A stretch of 64,000 nucleotides of DNA from Cyanophora paradoxa CCMP329 (GCA_004431415.1 QPMI01000439.1:310001-374000); one strand, 5' to 3'. Counted from the stretch's first letter, positions 32,617-45,400 are shown. The notes: a model not told the origin generated them from the sequence alone. Program-made: numbers and translations.

Positions 32617-35600
32617 ATGTCGGAGCACGCATTCGTGCCGTCGCTCCCTGGGGCGAGCAGTTCGCGCGGCTGCCCCCCCTCCTCCAGTGCATGCATCAGT
32701 AGTTCAGCGGCGCGTGCGCCAGCGACCGCTCGTGCCGCGGTCCAGCCGGAGGCGGCGGCGCGCTCCTCCGCCTCGCGCTGTCCCCAGTCGCTCTGGAGGC
32801 ACGAAGAACAGAGCCAAGCACGCGAGCTTCTCTCCAGCTTCCGATCCCCGGTCTTCGGGTCCACCAGCCCGAGGCTCCGGTTTCAAGTCAACCAGCGCCT
32901 AGCGGGGGAGCCGCGGACATTCCTCGTGAGGGCCATACAAGCGACGTCCAGTCCACAGGATCCGAGCGGCGATCGGGTGCGCTCCGCCCTGAACCTGGGT
33001 CGCACGCCCCCTGCACGTGTCGGAGGGCGCGTGCCCCGCTGCCCAGGCTCACTGCATTCTTCTTTCCCACTTGCGCAGCATCGCAAACTAGTAAAGGTCG
33101 CTCTCACGTTCGCGGCAAGCTGTGCAGCGGCTTTTGTCCTTAGGGCGGTCCGCGCTGGCTCTCTGGACGCCCTGCCGCTTCCCTTCCGGCCTGCAGCACT
33201 CGGCATTGGAAAGATCATCGCTATTGTCGTTGCTTCATGCCTCCTGGCAGTCGTTGCGAAGTTCGCTATCACTGCCGGTCTGCCTTCGTCCCTGCGACGC
33301 CTCGCGCGCGTCCCTGATGTGCGGCTCTTCTTTTTCTCCTTGCGCAGACTCCGCAGAAAAGAAACTTCAGACCTGGTTGACCCCGGAGAAGCCAGCCGCG
33401 GGCCCCACGTGCGCGCCACGCGCACCGCCTGTGGACCGTCGTCTCACCCCTTTGCGCGCGCGCAGCGTGGGGGACAATGCGTCTTGGTACAGGAGATCCC
33501 TCGCTAGCGGGATCGCGCGCGCGTCGGGCCTGATGAACAGTCCCCCTCCGGACTTGTCCAGCCACATCGTCCTCGCGCGCGAGTCCTCTGGCCGCGCGAA
33601 GAAGAAGCGTTCCTACGTGATCCAGGCACGCGTAGCGCAGCGGCCGCACCGCGCGATCGCCTGCCTGCCGCTAACGAGCGCCGCGCCCGCAGAACGGGAA
33701 GCTGACGGCGGTGGCGGACCGGGATGACCGGCCCGTGCTTGAGCGCTTCCGCGACCTCGTGACGACTATGTACCTTCCGCTCGGCTTCCCGGACAGCGTC
33801 ACGCCGGATTACTGGCACTTCACCGTGTGGCAGGTCCGCCGGATTCAAATTTGATCCGGTCTCTCTCTCGCTCGCTCTCGCCTCTCGCCGACGCGCCGCC
33901 GCTCCGCAGTTCATCCAGAACTTCGCCGCGTCTGCGTGCTCGGTCATCTCCACGCAGGCGCTGCTCCGCGCCGTCGGGCTCTCGGCCGGCAAGGCCATCC
34001 CGACCGCGGCGACGCTCAACTGGGTGCTCAAGGATGGCATCGGCCGCATCGGCGCCATGATCTTCGGTTCGCTCTTCGGCAACTGCTTCGACAACGACCC
34101 GAAGCGGTGGCGGCTCGCCGGGGACGCGCTCTACGACATGGGAATGGGCCTCGAGATCCTCTCCCCGCTCGTCCCGTCCTTCTTCCTGCTCACGGCCTCC
34201 ACCGCCAACGCGGCGAAGACCATCTCGTACATGATGCGGCTCCCGCCCCGCGCCGCCATCTTCCGCTCCTTCGCCGGCCGCGAGAACCTCGGGGACATCT
34301 CCGCAAAGTACAACTCCCAGGAGGTACAAGCGTACCTGTTCAAACTTTCTTATCTATCTAAACTGATCTGATCTATCTTACAGGTTGCCGCGAACCTGGC
34401 GGGAATGGGCCTCGGCATCGCCCTCTCTACGGTCGTGGGCGTGCAGGCCGGCCCCGCCTTCGCCGCCTACGCCCTCCTCGTCTCCACGCACCTCTACGCC
34501 AACTACAGGAGCCTTAAGGTACCCCCTCCTCTCTTTTCCTTTCATTACCTTTGTTATTCCTGCAACTTATCCGGCCCAACTTTCTCTTGTTAGGACCTGC
34601 GCCTTCCCACGCTCAACTGGGAGCGCATGCTCGTGCTCCTCCGGTCGTACGTCGAGGGCGGGCGCATCCCCGAGCCCCTCGAGGTACCGTACCCCCGCAC
34701 GCGCTGTTTTTTAAAGTGCCCTGTACCCCCGCCGACTCGTCCCGAAAGGTGAACCACGCGGAGCGGATCCTGTACCTCCCGGGCACGGAGCAGCGCCAGA
34801 TCCACTTCGGGGCCGCCCTCGAGGACGTGCGCCCCTACCCCCCTCTTCCATCCCGTACCCCCCGCCCTCGACCCGGCCTCGCTGACGTACCCCTCTTCAA
34901 AAAAATCAGATTGCGGAGAACGCGGAGGAGCTGGGCCAGCTGATGCTCCTGTACAGAGATGAGAAGTATATGGTCAATTGGCGGGTACGCTATTTGATCC
35001 GCCTTGCTCTGTTTGTGCTCGATCTAAGACTCCGTTCGTTCATGCAGGACGGTCGCGCTGTCTGCGTCGTCAAGGGCAACGCGAACACAATGGACCTGCT
35101 CAAGTGCCTCCTCCAGGTTCGAACCCGGAACTTGATATATCTTTCGGATCAGATCATCTGAGCGTCTGTCTACCAGGCCGGACGCCTGTACCAGCGGATG
35201 CAGGGCCTTACCGGCCTTCGCCCCGCCACGGCGAACGAGCTGGAGCTCCGCTCTTCTGGGCGCGTCCTCGAGGAATCCTACGCATTCGCCCAGGCCCGCT
35301 TCGGCCGCTTCTACCGAGCCCTCGAGCAGCAGGTGCCTAGTACTTGATACGCGTGCAGCCGTCCAAGAGCCTAAGAGTTCGGGCAGGGCTGGAACGTGAC
35401 TCACGTGCTCTTCGAGCCCGGCTGCCGCGTCTCCTACGACACGGCGCTCGTGCTGCCCGCCCTGGGGGTACAGATCCCCGAGGAGCGGCCCGAGCACGTG
35501 GTCTGGGAGGGCAGCGTACCCTCCCAGCCCTCGAACCCCCACCCGGCCGCCTTCGCCGCGGCGGCGGCGGCCGCCGCCGCCGGCGGACGCGAGGGCGGCC

Positions 35601-35644
35601 CGGGCGTACCCTCCCCGAACTCCATCCCCCCGGCCTCTCGGTAG
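32617..35644 (+). CDS. RUS (root UVB sensitive)/DUF647 family protein with plastid transit peptide
   Basis: LPLGFPDSVTPDYWHFTVW, VISTQALLRAVG, ATLNWVLKDGIGRIGAMIF, FDNDPKRWRL, FAGRENLGDISAK, LPTLNWER; the N-terminus MSEHAFV... is Ser/Ala/Arg rich. Confidence 0.92.
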
Positions 35645-36627
35645 GGGCCGGGCCTCAGCGGCTCCTCCGCTTCATATGAGGCGGCCCCGGACCGCCCTCG
35701 TTTATGGTTACTGTAGTCCCGTACGAGATCTCGAGACAGTAATATTTGGACTCCCTTCGAGCCGATGCAAGCCCCGCAGCATCTGTAGAGTACCCCCGGC
35801 AAGCTCGTGCTAGCGTATGCAAAACTTTTCAATTGCAGCGATGCAAGTGCTTTTCATGATTAGCTAGGCATGGGCGTCGACGCTAGAAGTAGCGATTGTG
35901 TACATGTGACAGGCACTGACAGCAGCCTCAATGCCGCTCGGGGCGGTGGACGGGGGATCGGAGGGGCGACGGTGCCGGCGGAGCTCGCGGTCGAGCGGGG
36001 CGTCGGCGCTCGCGGGGCACGTGTACCATGTACATGTGACAGCGCTAGCAGCCTCACGGTCGCGTTGGCCGCCGGCCCCCCGGGCCGGGGCGGTGCCACG
36101 GTAGACGGGGGAGGGGCGGGGGCGGCGCGGCGACTCGGCGAGCCGACCCCGGGCCCGGCCCGGCGGGCGCGTGGCCGTCGACGTCGGGGGCCGGCGGCTC
36201 GCTGCGCGTGAGGGCGGGCCGCCGGCTGCCCGGGGCGGTGGACGGCGGAGGGGCTGCGGCGCCGGCGGTGGCGGAGTGGCGAACTCCGGGAGACCGGGGA
36301 GGGCTCGTGGGCCGCCGCGGGGGTGGAGCCGCGCGGCTCGGGCGAGAGCTCGAGGGAGCGGCGCGGCCCGGGGCCGGGCGCGGGCGCGGTCGTCCGCAAA
36401 GGTCACCGGGCGCGGCCGCCGTCGCCTGTAACCCCCGCAGCTGCTCCGCCTGCAGCTGCTCGCCTCCCGTCGTCAAAAGGGGATGGGGGGGATGGGGGGG
36501 GAGGGGGGGGGCGGGGGGCGGGGGCGGGGCGGCGAGGGGGGGGGGGGGGACCCGGGAGTGGGGGTGGAGGGGTGGGGGGGGGGGGGGAGGGAGGGGAAGC
36601 TGATGAAGAAAAGGGGGCACCGCGATC

Positions 36628-39600
36628 TTAATACTTGGGCAACTCCTCTCGGAGGCCCTCGATGAGAGCGCCGGCTGCCTTGTTCACTGCGTCGTCCCCC
36701 TCCCCGTATTTGCATTGTTCCGTCCAGTTCACGGAAGACAACATCATCTGCCGCGAACGCCATTCAGTCAGCCGAGGCGTGGGGGAAAGCACATGTGCAA
36801 CTGCACTCTGTAGTCCGCGCGCAGCGCGATGGACTTCCAATCGACGAGCCACACTGCCGCCTCCGGTTTCAGATGGCTGTACCCAATTGCAAGGGTAAAC
36901 AAGGGTGAACGGTACCAGGAAACTTGGGAATTCGTAGTTCATGGGCGAAAAGCATCTTTCGTGATCATGATCAGGCGGTTAGATTGTACGAGTACGTATG
37001 CGCGCAGGGCCTGCAGCTAGCTGGCCACAAGGCATGCATGCCTCGTCATCGCAGTTCTTGGACGAAAGATAGGCCGGCGAGAGGAAGCATATGAAGGACT
37101 TGCAGCGCTCCATCGCTTCCTGCACCGACCCGCTTATTAATCAATTAAATATATCACAATATCATAGTATAGCGCGGGGAAGGCATATGATCTTGAGCAT
37201 CGTGCACCGCGATCTTGAGCATCCATCTCTGGCCCGCCTTCAGCTCGCGATCCACCCTGTGATCGCGAACCAGTGAGCGAAAGGTGGAAAGCCGCGTCCA
37301 CACGGAGCGGAGGGAGACCATATTTTGATGCCGGCCGCCTGGAGCAAGTCGCAGTAGCGGAAGACGACCGCCGCGTCGACGTGCGCGTAGCTGCGTGGCG
37401 AATCGATATCGTGAGGCGTGGATTAGCAGCAGGACTCCGAGGCTCCGGGAGGAAGGCCCGCTGGCGCTCGCCTCACGAAGCAGTCCCAGGTGTTCTCGTG
37501 CGGCGTGTGCTGCGTCGCCGGTGCGTGCTGTTGCATGGCCGGGTGCCACGTCGCCGGCGTGGGCGACCCGGCTGCAGCCGCGGCCGGTGGCGACAAAGTC
37601 GGAGACGTTGCGTGATGCGGGGCAAGCTGCGTAGGAGGCGGGGGCGAAGGGCTGAACGAGGCTGGACCCGGCTGCAACACGGCAGGAGCAGCAGCTGCAG
37701 GAGAACTGGCCACGGCTGACTGCGGAAGAAGTGAGAGGCGGCGCTGCGAAAGCGGTACAGCTGCAGTCACTCTTACCGGCGTCGAGGGGACAGAAACAGT
37801 GAGCTGCTTGAACTGTTGGGTCAGTGCGGGAGCAGGCTGCAGCAAGGCGTGAGGGGCGTCGGCGTGAAACCGAGAAGGTTGCATACCCCAAAGGGGGTTT
37901 CGATTGTATTCAAGGCGTGCGGGATGAAAGTTGGCGGAGGCTGCCGTGCACTGTGAGAAGCTCATGACTACTGTGCGCGAGGCGATGTAGACCCACCGCA
38001 AAGACTGCCGGGGCGGCGCCGGCGGCGAAACCACAAGGTGGCACTGGCCATGGTGTGGCAGACTGAATGCCGTCGAACCATGGCAGGTTGGAGCCTAGGA
38101 ACGGTGAAGGGGGGGGGGGGGGGGGGAGGGGGGAGGGGGGGCGGGTCAGGAAGCGGGCGGGGGCAGCGCCGGGAGGGGAGGGGCCGGGAAGGGGTCAAAA
38201 GAAAGCGGGCGGGGGCGGGGAAGGGGAGGGAGGGGGAGCGGAGAGGGTTCAGGAGAAGCGGACAGGGGCGGCGCCGGGCGGGGGCGGCGCCGGCGCCGGG
38301 AGGAGAAGGGGGATGGGGGAGCAGGGAGGGGTCGAGAGGAAGCGGGCGGATGCAGCGCCGGGAGGGAAGAGGGCGGGGGCGGCGGTCAAGAGAAAGCGGG
38401 GGTGGAGGGGGGGGGGAGGGGGCGAGGGCGAGGGGTAGCAGAAAGGGGTCAGGAGGAAGCGAGCGGGGGCGGCGCCGGGAGGGGAATCCGGGGAGGGGAG
38501 AGGGGGGGGGGGGGGGGGGGGGGGCGTTTAGGGCGTTTGGGGCGCGTCTTCTCACCATTTCGGGCGCGCGCAGCATCCTTGGTCAGCATCGAGATGTGGG
38601 CCCCTTGTTGAGCGAGGAGGATCAAGCGCATCGCCATGCAGAACTCGATGCGCCCAAGTGATGGCTGACCATTGGCGGTTGCCTCCCAGACCTGCGAAAA
38701 TCCTCACTCAAACATTTATATATTAAATTTAAATTAAATGATTAAATTTGAGCTCACCCGTTTTAGAACATCACGGGAAAGGCCGGACTTGAGCAGAAAC
38801 TGAGCCTCGGCGCTGCAGCGACGCCACGTATGATGAGGGGAGATTAATTATATAATTTGAAGAAAAGGTCGAACATATACAATCAAATACGCACCCATTT
38901 ATTTGGCCGTCGCGGTCTTGATCGGCTAGCTTGAAAAGATGCTGGTAAAAGTTGCGCTCTTGCTCAGAAAGCTGCAGGCCTTGGCCTAGGTCTCCTGCAG
39001 TACTCGCTGACGGGACGGGGCGCAAGCTGTCCGATGATGGGGAAGGAGACGAGGGGGGGGGGGATGCCGATCGCGACGCTGGCCGCGGCGCCGCAGAATG
39101 AGCCGCGGGGTTGGCAGCCGTCTCGGGCTGCGGTACAGCTTGTTAGATGCGCACGCGGCAGCTGCAGAGGGAAAGCGGCATGGCCACCGTGACACACATA
39201 CCCTCGCACTAGGGGCAGGGGGAGACTTCTTATCTCTGTCACATCCGGATCCGGCCAGATCTCGCTTGACGAGCCCCGTCGGTTCGAATTGCAAGCCAGT
39301 AAGCTGCCGGAAGAAAATAGTGTGAGTGGGCATGAGCGCTTTGGCAGGAGGGCGGCGCTTTGGCATGAATGCCTTGTTTAGAATGGAAAAGAGACTCGAT
39401 GTGCCAACACGGTGAAGCATCTGGTGATAGACAAAGTGCGAGTGAAAGAAATTGAGTTCCTTCTCCCGCCCCTGCGACATACTGCGCCGCTCATTGATTT
39501 CCTTCTGACTGCGATTTATGACTCCAATCCAGCCGTTCTTGCGAGGCAAAAGCTCTCCGGAGAGTAGGTCACCCGCATCTGTTCCTTGATCCATAAGGTC

Positions 39601-41053
39601 CAGCTTCGTTAGCACAGCGAGCGTGCGGTCGCCTGCGACAGCGGATCCGGAGCAATATTAATATAAATGCATGCGCGTGATCATGATCATCGACAGAGCG
39701 GAGATCATTAAAATATTCATTGAAGAGAGAAAGCACCCTTGGGGTCAACCTGCTTGCACAGATCAATCGCAACGGAGTTGGCAACATCGGTGTTGGAAGC
39801 AGTCACGGCCTGCGCATCCCGCAGTGCGCCAGGTGGGCGGTACGCAATACAGCCCCCGCATCATGATCATGCGCACCAGCATGAAAGTATCCTTCTTTAA
39901 TATGTGGTGCATCACCATCTTTCGGATTTGCTGATCGATGTCCGCGGGCTGATTACCTAGATCCGAATATTGCAAGCGTGAGCAAGCGATTGGGGAAAGT
40001 TGGAGCAAAGTCTGATCATGAGCCCTACGCACCGGCTGGCACTTTAGTGAGCCCAGGGAGATCGACAAGCGTGACGCTGTGACCTGCAGCAAATCAAAGA
40101 GATTTACGTGAGCGCATCGATCTCGAAATCGAATCAGGGCGAGAGATCATGCAGTGAGAATCGAAGATAATAATAGTGCACCATAATCATGCGGAGAGCA
40201 GATTTTCAAGTAGATGGGGTCGCTCGAGATGCCCAAGTTGCCGCCGGTCTTCCGGTCGGTCTCCAAAATGATCTCCTGGCGGACCTCCTCGAAATCGTAC
40301 CATTTCCGGCCCAGTTGATGCCGAAACTCAGCGAATGTTTCTGCGCAACAGGAATCGAACAGGTGCTGAGTTCACTTAAGCGCACCACAAGCGGTGCTAG
40401 ATCTAGAATTCGAATTCGAACGCAAACAGAACAGACCACTCAACGGCTGGAAGAGGAGCTCGATGATAAGAGGCCGGCGGGTGACTGATCATGAACGTCG
40501 GTTAGTAATATATATATCGATCATAAGGATGATCATCGCGATCGGAGGATATATAGACGATCCGCGCAAGGTCCTATATAGCTAGCTATATATAGACTCA
40601 CCGATACCACTCCCACGCGGAAGAAACTCGATGCCGACAAGATTCTCGAGCACACTGAAGGCATGTATTGGGCGCCAATATTAATTGCAATTGCAAAGGA
40701 GGAAGCGAGAATGCATATGGAAGCCTGGCAGCGAGGATGCACCTCGACTTCCCGCAAGATTGCGCTCCAACAACCTTCGATCAAGACCATACCAGGAAGG
40801 CGCGCGACCGGATATTAGTAGTCACATGCAGACAGCCGCTGAGCACCTATTAATTAATAATGCGCACCACAATTTGCGACACATTCTCAAGAGGCGGCAG
40901 AGCCTCGAAATCAGACTGAGGCAAGGGTATTCAAAGGGCTGCCACATTGAGCAAATTAAAGAAAGTGGAGCGCTAGCTCACCGTTTTGGATGGATTGAGG
41001 GCCGGACGATCTAACTTTTTCTCCCTAGCGATCCAGCTCTTGAACTTCGACAT
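36628..41053 (-). CDS. Dynamin-family GTPase domain - EH domain - Pro-rich linker - TIR domain fusion protein
   Basis: In-phase exons give [63 protein letters not shown] (dynamin G1-G5); [39 protein letters not shown]...EFCMAMRLI (EH); WDCFVSYAHVD...[63 protein letters not shown] (TIR). Confidence 0.85.
38110..38520. repeat. G-rich degenerate minisatellite intron
   Basis: About five imperfect copies of (a/g)agcgggcggggg(c)(a/g)gcgccgggagggg between poly-G runs, inside the intron after the EH domain. Confidence 0.7.
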
Positions 41054-42464: not shown

Positions 42465-45400
42465 CTATCCGAAGTGGAAGGTGAACTGCATGTTCTGCCC
42501 CCCGAAGTTCTGGAAGGGGTTCCCCTGCTGCTGGGGGACCTGCGGGGGTAGAGGGCGCGCCGTCGGTTAGGCTGGGCCAGGCCGGGGGTTGGGCTGGGCT
42601 AGGCGACACGGGTACGGTTCCTTGTTTATGGAGGGAGGGCGCCGTCGGTTAGGCTAAGGGGGGAGAGGCTTTTTGATTTCTATTCCAAGCTCCTTGTTTG
42701 TGGAGGGAGAGCGCCGTCGGTTAGGCGGCGCGGGTTCGTTCCCTGTTTATGGATCCGGAGACGATGTCGGTTCGTTCTAATTCACAAGGGGGTACGGTTC
42801 TTTCTTTGTTTCTTTGTTTATGGAGGGGGGGGGGTACGCGCCTGGACGTCCTCGCCGTTGTCGTACCTGCGGCGCTTCTCCTCGTCCGAGAGCACCTCGT
42901 ACGCCTGCACGTGTACCCCCGCCCGGCCCGCGTCACGACCAGCCCGGGGCTGAGACGCGAAGAGGCGGCGCGGCGCGCCCAGCTAGCGTGGCGTGACTCT
43001 CAGCTAGCCGGCTAGCGCCGCTAGTTCTTGAGCGAGGGGGCTTTCGGTCTAGTATAGTATAATCTAGTCTGCTCTAAGCCTTTACTTAGTGCGGCGGGGG
43101 CAGGGCGGGGGCGGGGCGGGGTGGGGGCGGGGCGGGGGCGGGGCGGGGCGGGGCGGGGCGGGGGCGCGGGGCGCGGGGGCCGGCCGGCTTCGGCGATGTC
43201 TAGCAAGTAGAGTCTAATAGAGTCTATTAATCTAGCTCAAGATTCTGATTCTGGGTATAGATCACGATACTATAGCTCACGATCCTATAGCTCACGATCC
43301 TATAGCTCAGCGGTTCCGCATTCTATAGTTCAAGATTCTATAGGGCGGGGGCGAGGGGTGGGGGCCTGCCGACCTCGGCGATGTCGTGGAAGAGCTAGAG
43401 TCTAATAATATAGCTAATTCTCAAGCTTCCAAGTCGAAGTCTAGAGTCTAGAGTCTTAGAGTCTAGAGTCTAAGCTTTCAAGCTTCAGATTTTAGTACTC
43501 TTTCGAGGCTGGAACTTCGGACCTCGGCGATGTCGTGGAAGAGCTTGACGGCGGCGTCCTTCTCCTCCTGCGTCGTCTGCTTGTCCGGGTGGTGCCTGCC
43601 GGGGGAGAAAGGGGACGAGGGGGGTCAGGCGAGAGGCGGGGCGGGACGGGGACAGAGGAGGGCGAAGGGCGGGGCGAAGGGCGGGGGGACGGCGGAGAGA
43701 GGCGAGGGCTCTACGCATCGGGCGATCGATCTAGGCGCGGCGAGGCGAGGGCGGCGGAGCGGGAGGCCTGTTTGGATCTAGTTCCTATGCCGCCTTATTC
43801 TCTAGCCTATCTCTGCGAGTTTCGCTTCTTCTCTCGGCAGCTCTGGCGCGCGCACTTGAGCGCCAGCTTGCGGTACGTCTTCTTGATGAGGTCCACGGGG
43901 GCGTCCCGGGGTACGCCAAGGATCTGGAATGGGGTGGGGGGGGTGGGGGGGGGGGGATCCGGATCAGGCCTGTCCCGGGGGCGGCGAGGGGGGGGAAGGG
44001 AGAGCGGGGAGGGCGGTGCTCCACCTTGTAGTAGTCCTTGCGCTTGCTCATCTCGAGGAGCCGCTGGGCGCGGGCGTACCTAAACGCGCGGGCCCGGGAC
44101 GCCCCCGGACGGTCAGAGGTGATGAGAAGGACGGGGCGGCGCTATCCCCGCCCGGCCCGGCCCGGCCCGCCCCGGCCCGGCCTGGCCAGCGGTGGGGTAG
44201 GTGCTGGGCGCGGGGCGCGGAGCGGGCGTGCGAAGCCGGTCGGAGGCGGGCGCTGTCTAGTCCCCTCTGGCCGGTCCATCCCGGTCTAGCGAAAGCGGGC
44301 GGGCGCTGTCTAGTCCGCTCTGGCGCTGTCTAGTCCGCTCTGGCGCTGTCTAGTCCCCTCGGGCGCGGGGCGGCGCGCGGGCGTACCCCTCCCGGGCCTC
44401 CTGGTTCCCCTGGTCCCGCTCGTGCGCGCTCTTGAAGTCCTGCACGGCCTGCGAGAACGCGTTACCCCCCTGAACCGGGCCGCGCCCGGCCGGGCGCCCC
44501 AGAAGAGGAGGGCTCGGGCGGGCGGGCTAGGGCTAGGGCTACGGGCGACCCCGGGCGCGGGGCGCGGGCGAGGAGAGCACGTTACCGGGCCGGCCCGCCG
44601 GGGGCGGGCCGGGAGCGGGCGGGCGGGCTGGGGCTAGGGCTAGGGGCGACCCCAGGCGCGGGGCGCGGGCGAGGCGAAAGCGTCACCCCCTCGAACGGGC
44701 CGGGTCGGGCCGGGGGTGGGAGGGCTAGGGCTTAAGGCCGGAGGCGGGGAGGGGAGGAGTTTAGGAAGGGGGGGTACGGGCGCACCGACTCCCATTCCTC
44801 GAGCTTGAGCTTGGCCTCACCCCTGCGCCCCGCGGCTCGGATCAGCGGGCGCGGCTCGACAGAAATCACACTCTCTTCTGCCGAGAGTGATCTCTAGATC
44901 TAGACAGAACTTTCGGACTAGACCCAGAGATCCTCTAGGAGATCTCTCGATCCTCTTGAACAGAACAGATTAGATCTTTAGATCTTTAGGGCGCACCGCT
45001 GGATCCAGGCCTCGACGAGGCCGCCGTCGGCGTCGATGGCGCGCGTGCACGCCTCCACGCCCTTCGCCCACTCCCCGCCCTGCAGGGGGAGCGAGAGGGC
45101 GTCAGCGGGGGCTTTAGAGAGGCTCTAGCGTCTGCCCAGAGCCCCGACGCGGGCGAGGGAGAGGGGGTGAGCGGGGTGGGGGTGGGGGGGAGGGAGGGAA
45201 GCCCGGCGGCTTCAGGCTTTAAGAAGGGCTCTAGCGTGGTGAGAGGGGGGGGGAGGGGGAGGGGGGGGGTGAGCGGGGTGGGGTGGGGGGGGGGAAAGGA
45301 GGCGGGGGTTGTGGGGCCTTAGCGGGGCTCTAGCGACGAACTAGGGCGATAAGGAGGGGGGAAGGGGGAAAGAGGACGCGGGGGGTACGGGACCTTGACG

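What the first reader, a model, noticed from the sequence alone, without database searches (positions are those of the whole stretch)
36628..41053. Hidden dynamin-GTPase / EH / TIR fusion: candidate membrane-sensing immune NADase
Seen: manual splicing joins, in frame, a complete dynamin G domain (~39373-40915), a Ser/Pro linker, an EH domain (~38555-38975), a Pro/Gln/Ala linker and a TIR domain (36628-~37490). The ORF track misses the TIR because it is split over six small exons, two of them ending at GC donors. The stalk and GED that normally follow the G domain are absent. The TIR keeps FVSY, WVD...[10 protein letters not shown] and C-x-x-E. Established: TIR NADases (SARM1, plant TNLs, bacterial Thoeris) need that Glu and are activated by oligomerisation; dynamin G domains dimerise on GTP; EH domains bind NPF motifs of endocytic proteins. 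Inference: a GTP-switched or decoy-type sensor that guards endocytic machinery and triggers NAD+ cleavage or cell death. I know of no described protein with this architecture.
Basis: partly seen in the sequence, partly recalled or inferred. Interest (0 to 1): 0.93.

Follow-up and report, generated by a model that had tools for sequence, protein, structure and literature searches.

The report
Algal dynamin-EH-TIR fusion gene
The alga Cyanophora paradoxa makes one real, spliced protein that joins copies of two of its own endocytosis parts (a dynamin GTP-cutting head and an Eps15-type gripping domain) to an immune-type TIR domain; I found this combination nowhere else, and its job is untested.

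Summary
Observation confirmed. In Cyanophora paradoxa, a 24-exon minus-strand gene (41053-36628) encodes a stop-free 755-aa protein: dynamin G domain, linker, EH domain, linker, TIR. Spliced RNA-type contigs from three studies join all three domains; a DNA-like run lacks the joints. The public model (g12664.t1) stops before the TIR.

The G domain is dynamin-proper, not EHD-type. All catalytic and dimer-interface residues are kept, while stalk, GED and bundle signalling element are gone. The EH domain is a 69% copy of EH1 of the alga's own Eps15-like protein. The TIR keeps its Glu but lacks the WxxxE tryptophan, so NADase activity is uncertain. Purifying selection is evident.

No second protein with this layout turned up, and the scan has not found it on other DNA. 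It is one of many TIR fusions noted in this genome.

Best reading (0.4): a TIR enzyme tethered at endocytic sites and switched on by crowding and G-G pairing. Rivals: non-enzymatic receptor-sorting adaptor, decoy, or dynamin regulator. A free GTP switch is unlikely. The joined TIR was not searched or folded. New variant; interest 0.62.

The parts
36628..41053 (-). Whole coding gene, 24 exons, 755 aa. Exons: 41053-40982, 40915-40868, 40774-40743, 40654-40602, 40484-40437, 40340-40182, 40083-40033, 39956-39877, 39809-39737, 39632-39373, 39303-39202, 39127-38895, 38812-38758, 38691-38556, 38094-37997, 37940-37887, 37836-37777, 37719-37472, 37390-37319, 37256-37208, 37119-37042, 36955-36916, 36853-36807, 36747-36628
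   Evidence: residues 1-467 equal C. paradoxa g12664.t1
40883..41053 (-). N-terminal 35 aa: basic, low-confidence helix; at most a worn remnant of the first BSE helix; hinge Pro32 equivalent is Ser37
39373..40882 (-). Dynamin-proper GTPase (G) domain, aa 36-292, with G1-G4 and dimer-interface residues intact; ends at a phase-0 GC-AG intron before the second BSE helix is complete; no stalk, PH or GED
40748..40750 (-). P-loop Lys49 (dynamin-1 K44 equivalent)
38978..39303 (-). Ser/Pro/Ala linker 1 (aa 293-376)
38057..38977 (-). EH domain (about aa 377-480), 69% identical to EH1 of C. paradoxa Eps15-like g3276.t1; canonical first EF-hand; peptide-pocket Trp424 kept; homology runs across the 461-nt intron
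38095..38555 (-). 461-nt GT-AG intron with C-rich, roughly 50/95-nt repeats; the public model reads into it and stops, losing the TIR
37498..38056 (-). Pro/Ala/Thr/Gln linker 2 (about aa 481-612)
36628..37497 (-). TIR_2-type domain (aa 613-755) over the end of exon 18 and exons 19-24
37042..37044 (-). Catalytic Glu687, last codon of exon 21; the -4 position (Trp of WxxxE) is Asn683 at 37056-37054
36456..36620 (-). 165-nt 3' UTR intron starting 7 nt after the stop codon
41054..41650 (-). 5' UTR with two inferred introns (41446-41236, 41184-41064), an in-frame upstream stop and a 63-codon uORF ending 5 nt before the main ATG

Best explanation
A Cyanophora-lineage chimeric gene built from two endocytic host genes plus a TIR effector.

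Shown: one spliced open frame under purifying selection; EH copied from EH1 of the alga's Eps15-like protein; G domain weakly sister to a PH-bearing dynamin, stripped of every mechanical and polymerising part but keeping its catalytic and dimer residues; TIR with catalytic Glu.

Inferred: EH (Ca2+, NPF peptides, acidic lipids) parks the protein at endocytic pits. There the bare G domain, which cannot polymerise or cut membrane, pairs head-to-head with copies of itself or with G domains of the dynamin collar. When these sites pile up or stall (for example during virus or microbe uptake), the tethered TIRs cluster and hydrolyse NAD+. The product is probably linear ADPR rather than a cyclic signal, because the WxxxE Trp is missing. 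The outcome would be a stress or death signal.
For: Spliced contigs join all domains. All G1-G4, Q40, S41, G60, G62, T65, K142, D180 and D211 equivalents are kept, while both hinge prolines and the BSE helices are lost. The G-domain model has pLDDT about 90 and matches dynamin-1 G structures. Changes avoid conserved columns (11/85 vs 20/36, Fisher p 5e-6), and neutral decay to the EH's divergence would give 5-11 stops (at most 1 of 300 runs stop-free). EH donor identified; the best solved match is AtEH1/Pan1 EH1.1, which binds Ca2+ in its first EF-hand, NPF through the conserved Trp, and phosphatidic acid (PMC8144573). TIR NADases need self-association supplied by a partner domain. Unchecked scan notes list other trafficking- or GTPase-TIR fusions in this genome.
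Against: No functional data. Asn replaces the WxxxE Trp. Isolated G domains dimerise only in the transition state, and a dimer may be too small for a TIR enzyme assembly (own knowledge). Linkers of 84 and about 130 aa allow only proximity coupling. No orthologue was found to show conservation. The G branch is long (1.56), with some core changes such as D185V.
Confidence: 0.4

Rival explanations
1. Non-enzymatic sorting adaptor. The TIR binds the cytosolic TIRs of the alga's membrane receptors (as MAL/TRAM/MyD88 do), while EH and the G domain link them to the endocytic machinery, so activated receptors are internalised or signal from pits.
For: The WxxxE Trp is missing. The weak best PDB match of exon 21 is MyD88 (E 0.055, not significant). 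Both partner domains are endocytic. Scan notes report several TM-TIR receptors in this genome (unchecked).
Against: The catalytic Glu is kept, where MyD88 lacks it (own knowledge). Bacterial TIR_2 relatives with the Glu also vary at the -4 position.
Confidence: 0.25
2. Integrated decoy or guard. The G and EH copies are baits for pathogen or virus proteins that target dynamin or Eps15 (or for giant-virus dynamins); binding clusters the TIR.
For: Both baits are duplicates of host endocytic genes that have lost their working parts, and the G branch evolves fast. Giant viruses encode dynamins.
Against: Catalytic residues are fully conserved, more than a pure bait needs. No glaucophyte pathogen or effector is known to me. 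Viral dynamins are only 26-39% alike. There is no NLR-type switch domain.
Confidence: 0.15
3. A regulator of dynamin (a stalk-less head that caps or poisons the collar, or stimulates GTP hydrolysis in trans), with the TIR as a passenger or weak scaffold.
For: Intact G interface with no stalk; EH targeting.
Against: The TIR is intact over seven exons and spliced in three studies; a pure passenger would be expected to decay.
Confidence: 0.1
4. A young, near-neutral product of domain shuffling in a genome full of TIR fusions: transcribed but without a selected function.
For: Singleton with no orthologue; many odd fusions noted in this genome; low-level intron retention after the Glu in one run.
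Against: Stop-free 755 codons despite 31% divergence of EH from its donor, and conserved-site bias in G. The true G donor could not be fetched, so part of that bias may predate the fusion.
Confidence: 0.1

Closest known systems
Classical dynamins and DRPs (dynamin-1, Dictyostelium DymA, Vps1, Drp1)
   Same: G domain 52-58% identical, all catalytic motifs kept, same fold
   Different: No BSE, stalk, PH or GED, so no polymer or power stroke; carries EH and TIR instead
EHD/RME-1 proteins
   Same: Dynamin-superfamily G domain plus EH in one chain; the nearest Atlas feature hits are EHDs (0.83); in EHD2 the EH domain blocks the G interface, a possible model here
   Different: G domain is dynamin-proper with a GTP-type G4 motif, not the EHD ATPase; no EHD_N or DUF5600 helical domain; EH comes from an Eps15-like gene; TIR added. 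Convergent, not homologous, as a fusion
Eps15/Ede1/AtEH-Pan1 EH proteins
   Same: EH is a 69% copy of EH1 of C. paradoxa g3276.t1; best PDB match is AtEH1/Pan1 EH1.1
   Different: Only one EH; no coiled coil and no DPF motifs
TIR NADase receptors (SARM1, plant TNLs, Thoeris ThsB, bacterial STAND-TIR)
   Same: TIR_2-type domain with catalytic Glu, placed behind a module that could oligomerise
   Different: No SAM, NB-ARC or LRR; WxxxE Trp replaced by Asn; activity untested
Prokaryotic dimerising NTPase-TIR systems (ParA-TIR; bioRxiv 10.64898/2026.10.19.760177) and Roco-TIR proteins (own knowledge)
   Same: A nucleotide-dependent dimerising P-loop domain fused to a TIR effector
   Different: Different NTPase class; here a eukaryotic dynamin head with an endocytic targeting domain
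Plant NLRs with integrated decoy domains; animal TIR sorting adaptors (MAL, TRAM)
   Same: Host-derived domains or a membrane-targeting module joined to a TIR (own knowledge)
   Different: No NLR core; unicellular alga; no function shown

Membership tests
Classical dynamin / DRP | Dynamin-type G domain with G1-G4 motifs | tested here: met
Classical dynamin / DRP | Three-helix BSE with hinge prolines | tested here: not met
   P32->S, P294 absent, helices lost or degenerate
Classical dynamin / DRP | Stalk and GED for polymerisation | tested here: not met
   Dynamin_M only 1-69 of 287, no GED; transcript goes from G to linker
EHD/RME-1 | G domain plus EH domain in one chain | tested here: met
EHD/RME-1 | EHD-type ATPase G domain with EHD_N and DUF5600 helical domains | tested here: not met
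   No EHD_N or DUF5600 hit; all sequence and fold hits are dynamins/DRPs
EH domain (Eps15 type) | Paired EF-hand fold with conserved pocket Leu/Trp | tested here: met
   Pfam EH E 6.6e-10; Trp424 aligned with AtEH1 EH1.1 Trp
EH domain (Eps15 type) | Binds NPF peptides or acidic lipids | not testable with these tools
   needs a binding assay
TIR domain (TIR_2) | TIR sequence profile and motif order | tested here: met
   exon-level TIR_2 E 2.7e-4 to 7.5e-4 (below the curated cut-off, being a fragment), Atlas TIR_2 clusters, local alignment to bacterial TIR_2 far above shuffles
TIR domain (TIR_2) | TIR fold of the complete domain | not tested
TIR NADase (SARM1/TNL/Thoeris type) | Catalytic Glu in alpha-C | tested here: met
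   Glu687
TIR NADase (SARM1/TNL/Thoeris type) | WxxxE aromatic residue | tested here: not met
   Asn683
TIR NADase (SARM1/TNL/Thoeris type) | Oligomerisation-dependent NAD+ cleavage | not testable with these tools
   needs an enzyme assay
NLR with integrated decoy | STAND NTPase plus repeat sensor core | tested here: not met
   none in the model

The most novel reading that the evidence does not exclude
A unicellular alga has built an endocytosis-monitoring immune enzyme from its own parts: a bare dynamin head that reads the state of dynamin collars through G-G pairing, an Eps15-derived EH anchor, and a TIR NADase that fires when uptake sites stall or are hijacked. This would be the first dynamin-gated TIR and a guard system outside plants and animals.
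Probability: 0.25. Interest if true: 0.85.

Novelty: new variant of a known kind. Interest (0 to 1): 0.62.

Why it matters
It shows a dynamin GTPase head freed from its membrane-cutting machinery, kept catalytically intact and wired to a TIR domain: a new way to couple membrane traffic to TIR signalling. It also re-creates the EHD layout (G plus EH) independently. Both donors appear to be the alga's own endocytic genes, so it is a traceable case of an immune-type receptor assembled from host parts. The protein is missing from the public annotation (truncated at 502 aa), and no paper found describes Cyanophora TIR proteins. It is cheap to test in vitro or in yeast.

Tried and rejected
Separate genes or annotation artefact: rejected (EH-donor homology crosses the 461-nt intron). 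EHD family member: rejected. Pseudogene: unlikely. Viral origin of G: rejected, since giant-virus dynamins are 26-39% identical and have no EH or TIR nearby.

Searches for orthologues or the same architecture, all blank: exon-10 phmmer of representatives, whole P0001 (length window 276-878 aa only), EH region (only the donor), linker-2/TIR-start ORF, metagenome scans by EH peptide and by a lineage-specific motif (10 chance loci, no dynamin), prokaryote genome scan with TIR exon 21, PADLOC and NCBIfam (only weak FxsC TIR-like), and literature (the genome paper has no TIR mention).

The single-sequence fold was useless (pLDDT 37). Genes of P0001 and P0270 are not on record for DNA retrieval, so no dN/dS or intron comparison with the donors was possible. 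The Cyanophora copy of the PH-dynamin was not retrieved (probably above the length limit).

Full report
Source and gene. The exon-10 search returned a 100% identical protein, which is EukProt Cyanophora paradoxa g12664.t1 on tig00020675. The window is therefore from this glaucophyte alga. The public model is 502 aa: it matches my model to residue 467, then reads into a 461-nt intron and stops, so the TIR is absent from public annotation. Splicing at GT/GC-AG sites gives 24 coding exons from 41053 to 36628 and 755 aa without a stop.

Transcript test. Eleven RNA-like runs held 0.22-0.32 of the words, as spliced sequence would. I laid X1, X2 and X8 (three studies) and the DNA-like X12. The RNA-type contigs carry 15 listed joints, identical in all three and absent from X12. 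Contig coordinates add up to the predicted exon lengths for the rest. X2 record 12 and X8 record 13 each run from G-domain exons through EH to the last TIR exon. X1 record 3 runs from the 5' UTR to the catalytic Glu and breaks where a low-depth contig retains the GC-AG intron 36956-37041. Contigs can fuse neighbours (X2's continues 3 kb past the 3' end), but here the domains are linked by in-frame introns with no stop, and homology to the EH donor crosses the key junction. The data corrected two small linker exons. The RNA label is the tool's guess, and the runs probably come from one strain.

G domain. Pfam finds Dynamin_N 39-216 and only the first 69 of 287 positions of Dynamin_M, with no GED or PH. 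It is 52-58% identical to dynamin-1, DymA and relatives. An alignment-based model of residues 1-330 is confident over about 31-296 and matches dynamin G structures at about 1.7 A. Every catalytic and dimer-interface residue checked is kept (Q40, S41, K44, S45, G60, G62, T65, D136, K142, D180, K206, D208, D211 in dynamin-1 numbering). Both hinge prolines and the BSE helices are lost or degenerate. This is a coherent trimming to a bare head. In a tree of 61 G-domain cores (five long rows left out), it has a long branch (1.56) and is sister to a PH- and proline-tail dynamin from a JGI contig, L001/P0003, with SH-aLRT 88, which is suggestive only. An unchecked scan note says such a dynamin is conserved in glaucophytes. 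It is not an EHD ATPase, although the Atlas ranks EHDs first for the G plus EH layout.

EH domain. Its only close relative is C. paradoxa g3276.t1, an EH-EH-coiled coil-DPF protein of Eps15 type: 69% identical to EH1 and 36% to EH2. So the EH was copied within this lineage. It keeps a canonical first EF-hand and the pocket Trp424. The best solved match is AtEH1/Pan1 EH1.1 (E 3e-8), which binds Ca2+ in loop 1, NPF peptides through that Trp, and phosphatidic acid (PMC8144573).

TIR domain. Exon 21 hits TIR_2 and TIR_2 Atlas clusters. In a local script the joined domain aligns from beta-A to beyond alpha-C with two bacterial TIR_2 proteins (scores 95 and 77; shuffle maxima 54 and 53), with Glu687 in register. 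The WxxxE tryptophan is Asn683. All TIRs that made cyclic ADPR in the cited survey had an aromatic residue there; L6 W131A and ROQ1 W82A lose activity, SARM1 W638A is reduced, and AbTir W204A makes far less cyclic product (bioRxiv 10.1101/2022.05.07.491051). So NADase activity is possible but not assured, and a cyclic messenger is unlikely. The joined model was not sent to search or fold tools; the full TIR fold is untested.

Selection. At columns where the nearest relative equals the consensus, the fusion differs at 11 of 85 highly conserved against 20 of 36 variable positions (p 5e-6). Neutral point mutation to half or all of the EH's divergence from its donor gives on average 5.3 or 10.7 stops, and at most 1 of 300 runs was stop-free. 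The gene is maintained, with the caveat that the true G donor was not available.

Mechanism. TIR enzymes need a partner domain to cluster them. More likely, EH concentrates the protein at endocytic sites, where the bare head pairs with its own kind or with the dynamin collar, and crowding or stalling brings the TIRs together (inferred, 0.4). The main rival is a non-enzymatic adaptor that couples the alga's TIR-bearing membrane receptors to endocytosis (0.25). A decoy (0.15), a dynamin regulator (0.1) and a near-neutral chimera (0.1) follow.

Novelty. No other protein with this layout appeared in any search or paper. These searches have length and sensitivity limits, and glaucophyte sampling is thin. 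The logic of a dimerising NTPase fused to a TIR is known from ParA-TIR systems. Scan notes list many TIR fusions in this genome, including myosin-LRR-TIR and TIR-TIR-pseudokinase-GBP (unchecked), but not this architecture on other DNA. Verdict: a real, expressed, selected, lineage-specific new variant of TIR effector fusions, function unproven; interest 0.62. No contig met here was taken for human.

Noticed in passing
window 36956-37041 (- strand): The GC-AG intron right after the catalytic Glu is retained in a low-depth contig of run X1 (depth 3 vs 11-13). The retained form would end the TIR 20 codons later, a possible inactive isoform.
   Followed up: partly
window 41582 to about 41059 (- strand, spliced 5' UTR): A 63-codon uORF ends 5 nt before the main ATG, plus two shorter uORFs; could dampen translation of a toxic protein. 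No Pfam hit.
   Followed up: partly
window 36456-36620 (- strand): 3' UTR intron 7 nt after the stop. The X2 contig runs about 3.1 kb further, probably merging with the convergent gene's transcript.
   Followed up: partly
window about 33000-35900 (+ strand): Convergent neighbour is a RUS1/UVB_sens_prot family gene (Pfam E 1.6e-33).
   Followed up: partly
window 43785-44051 (- strand): Upstream ORF begins like a DnaJ domain by eye; no Pfam hit on this intron-interrupted ORF.
   Followed up: no
window 36628-37497: The TIR part has GC3 0.80 against 0.60-0.65 for the rest of the gene, which may hint at a different donor.
   Followed up: no
L001:22-3107: JGI contig encoding a PH- and proline-tail dynamin with an apparent frameshift in the G domain; nearest relative of the fusion's G domain; organism not identified.
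   Followed up: partly
P0270 (C. paradoxa g3276.t1): Eps15-like protein (EH-EH-coiled coil-DPF), donor of the EH domain; shows that this glaucophyte has an Eps15-type endocytic adaptor.
   Followed up: yes
L014-L032: Nineteen viral-collection contigs, most named as giant-virus genomes (GVMAG), encode dynamin-like G domains 26-39% identical to the query.
   Followed up: partly
L003:1318-3087; L002 near 1345-1800: Unannotated TIR_2-containing ORFs on Rhodococcus and Burkholderia plasmid records; used only as TIR references.
   Followed up: partly
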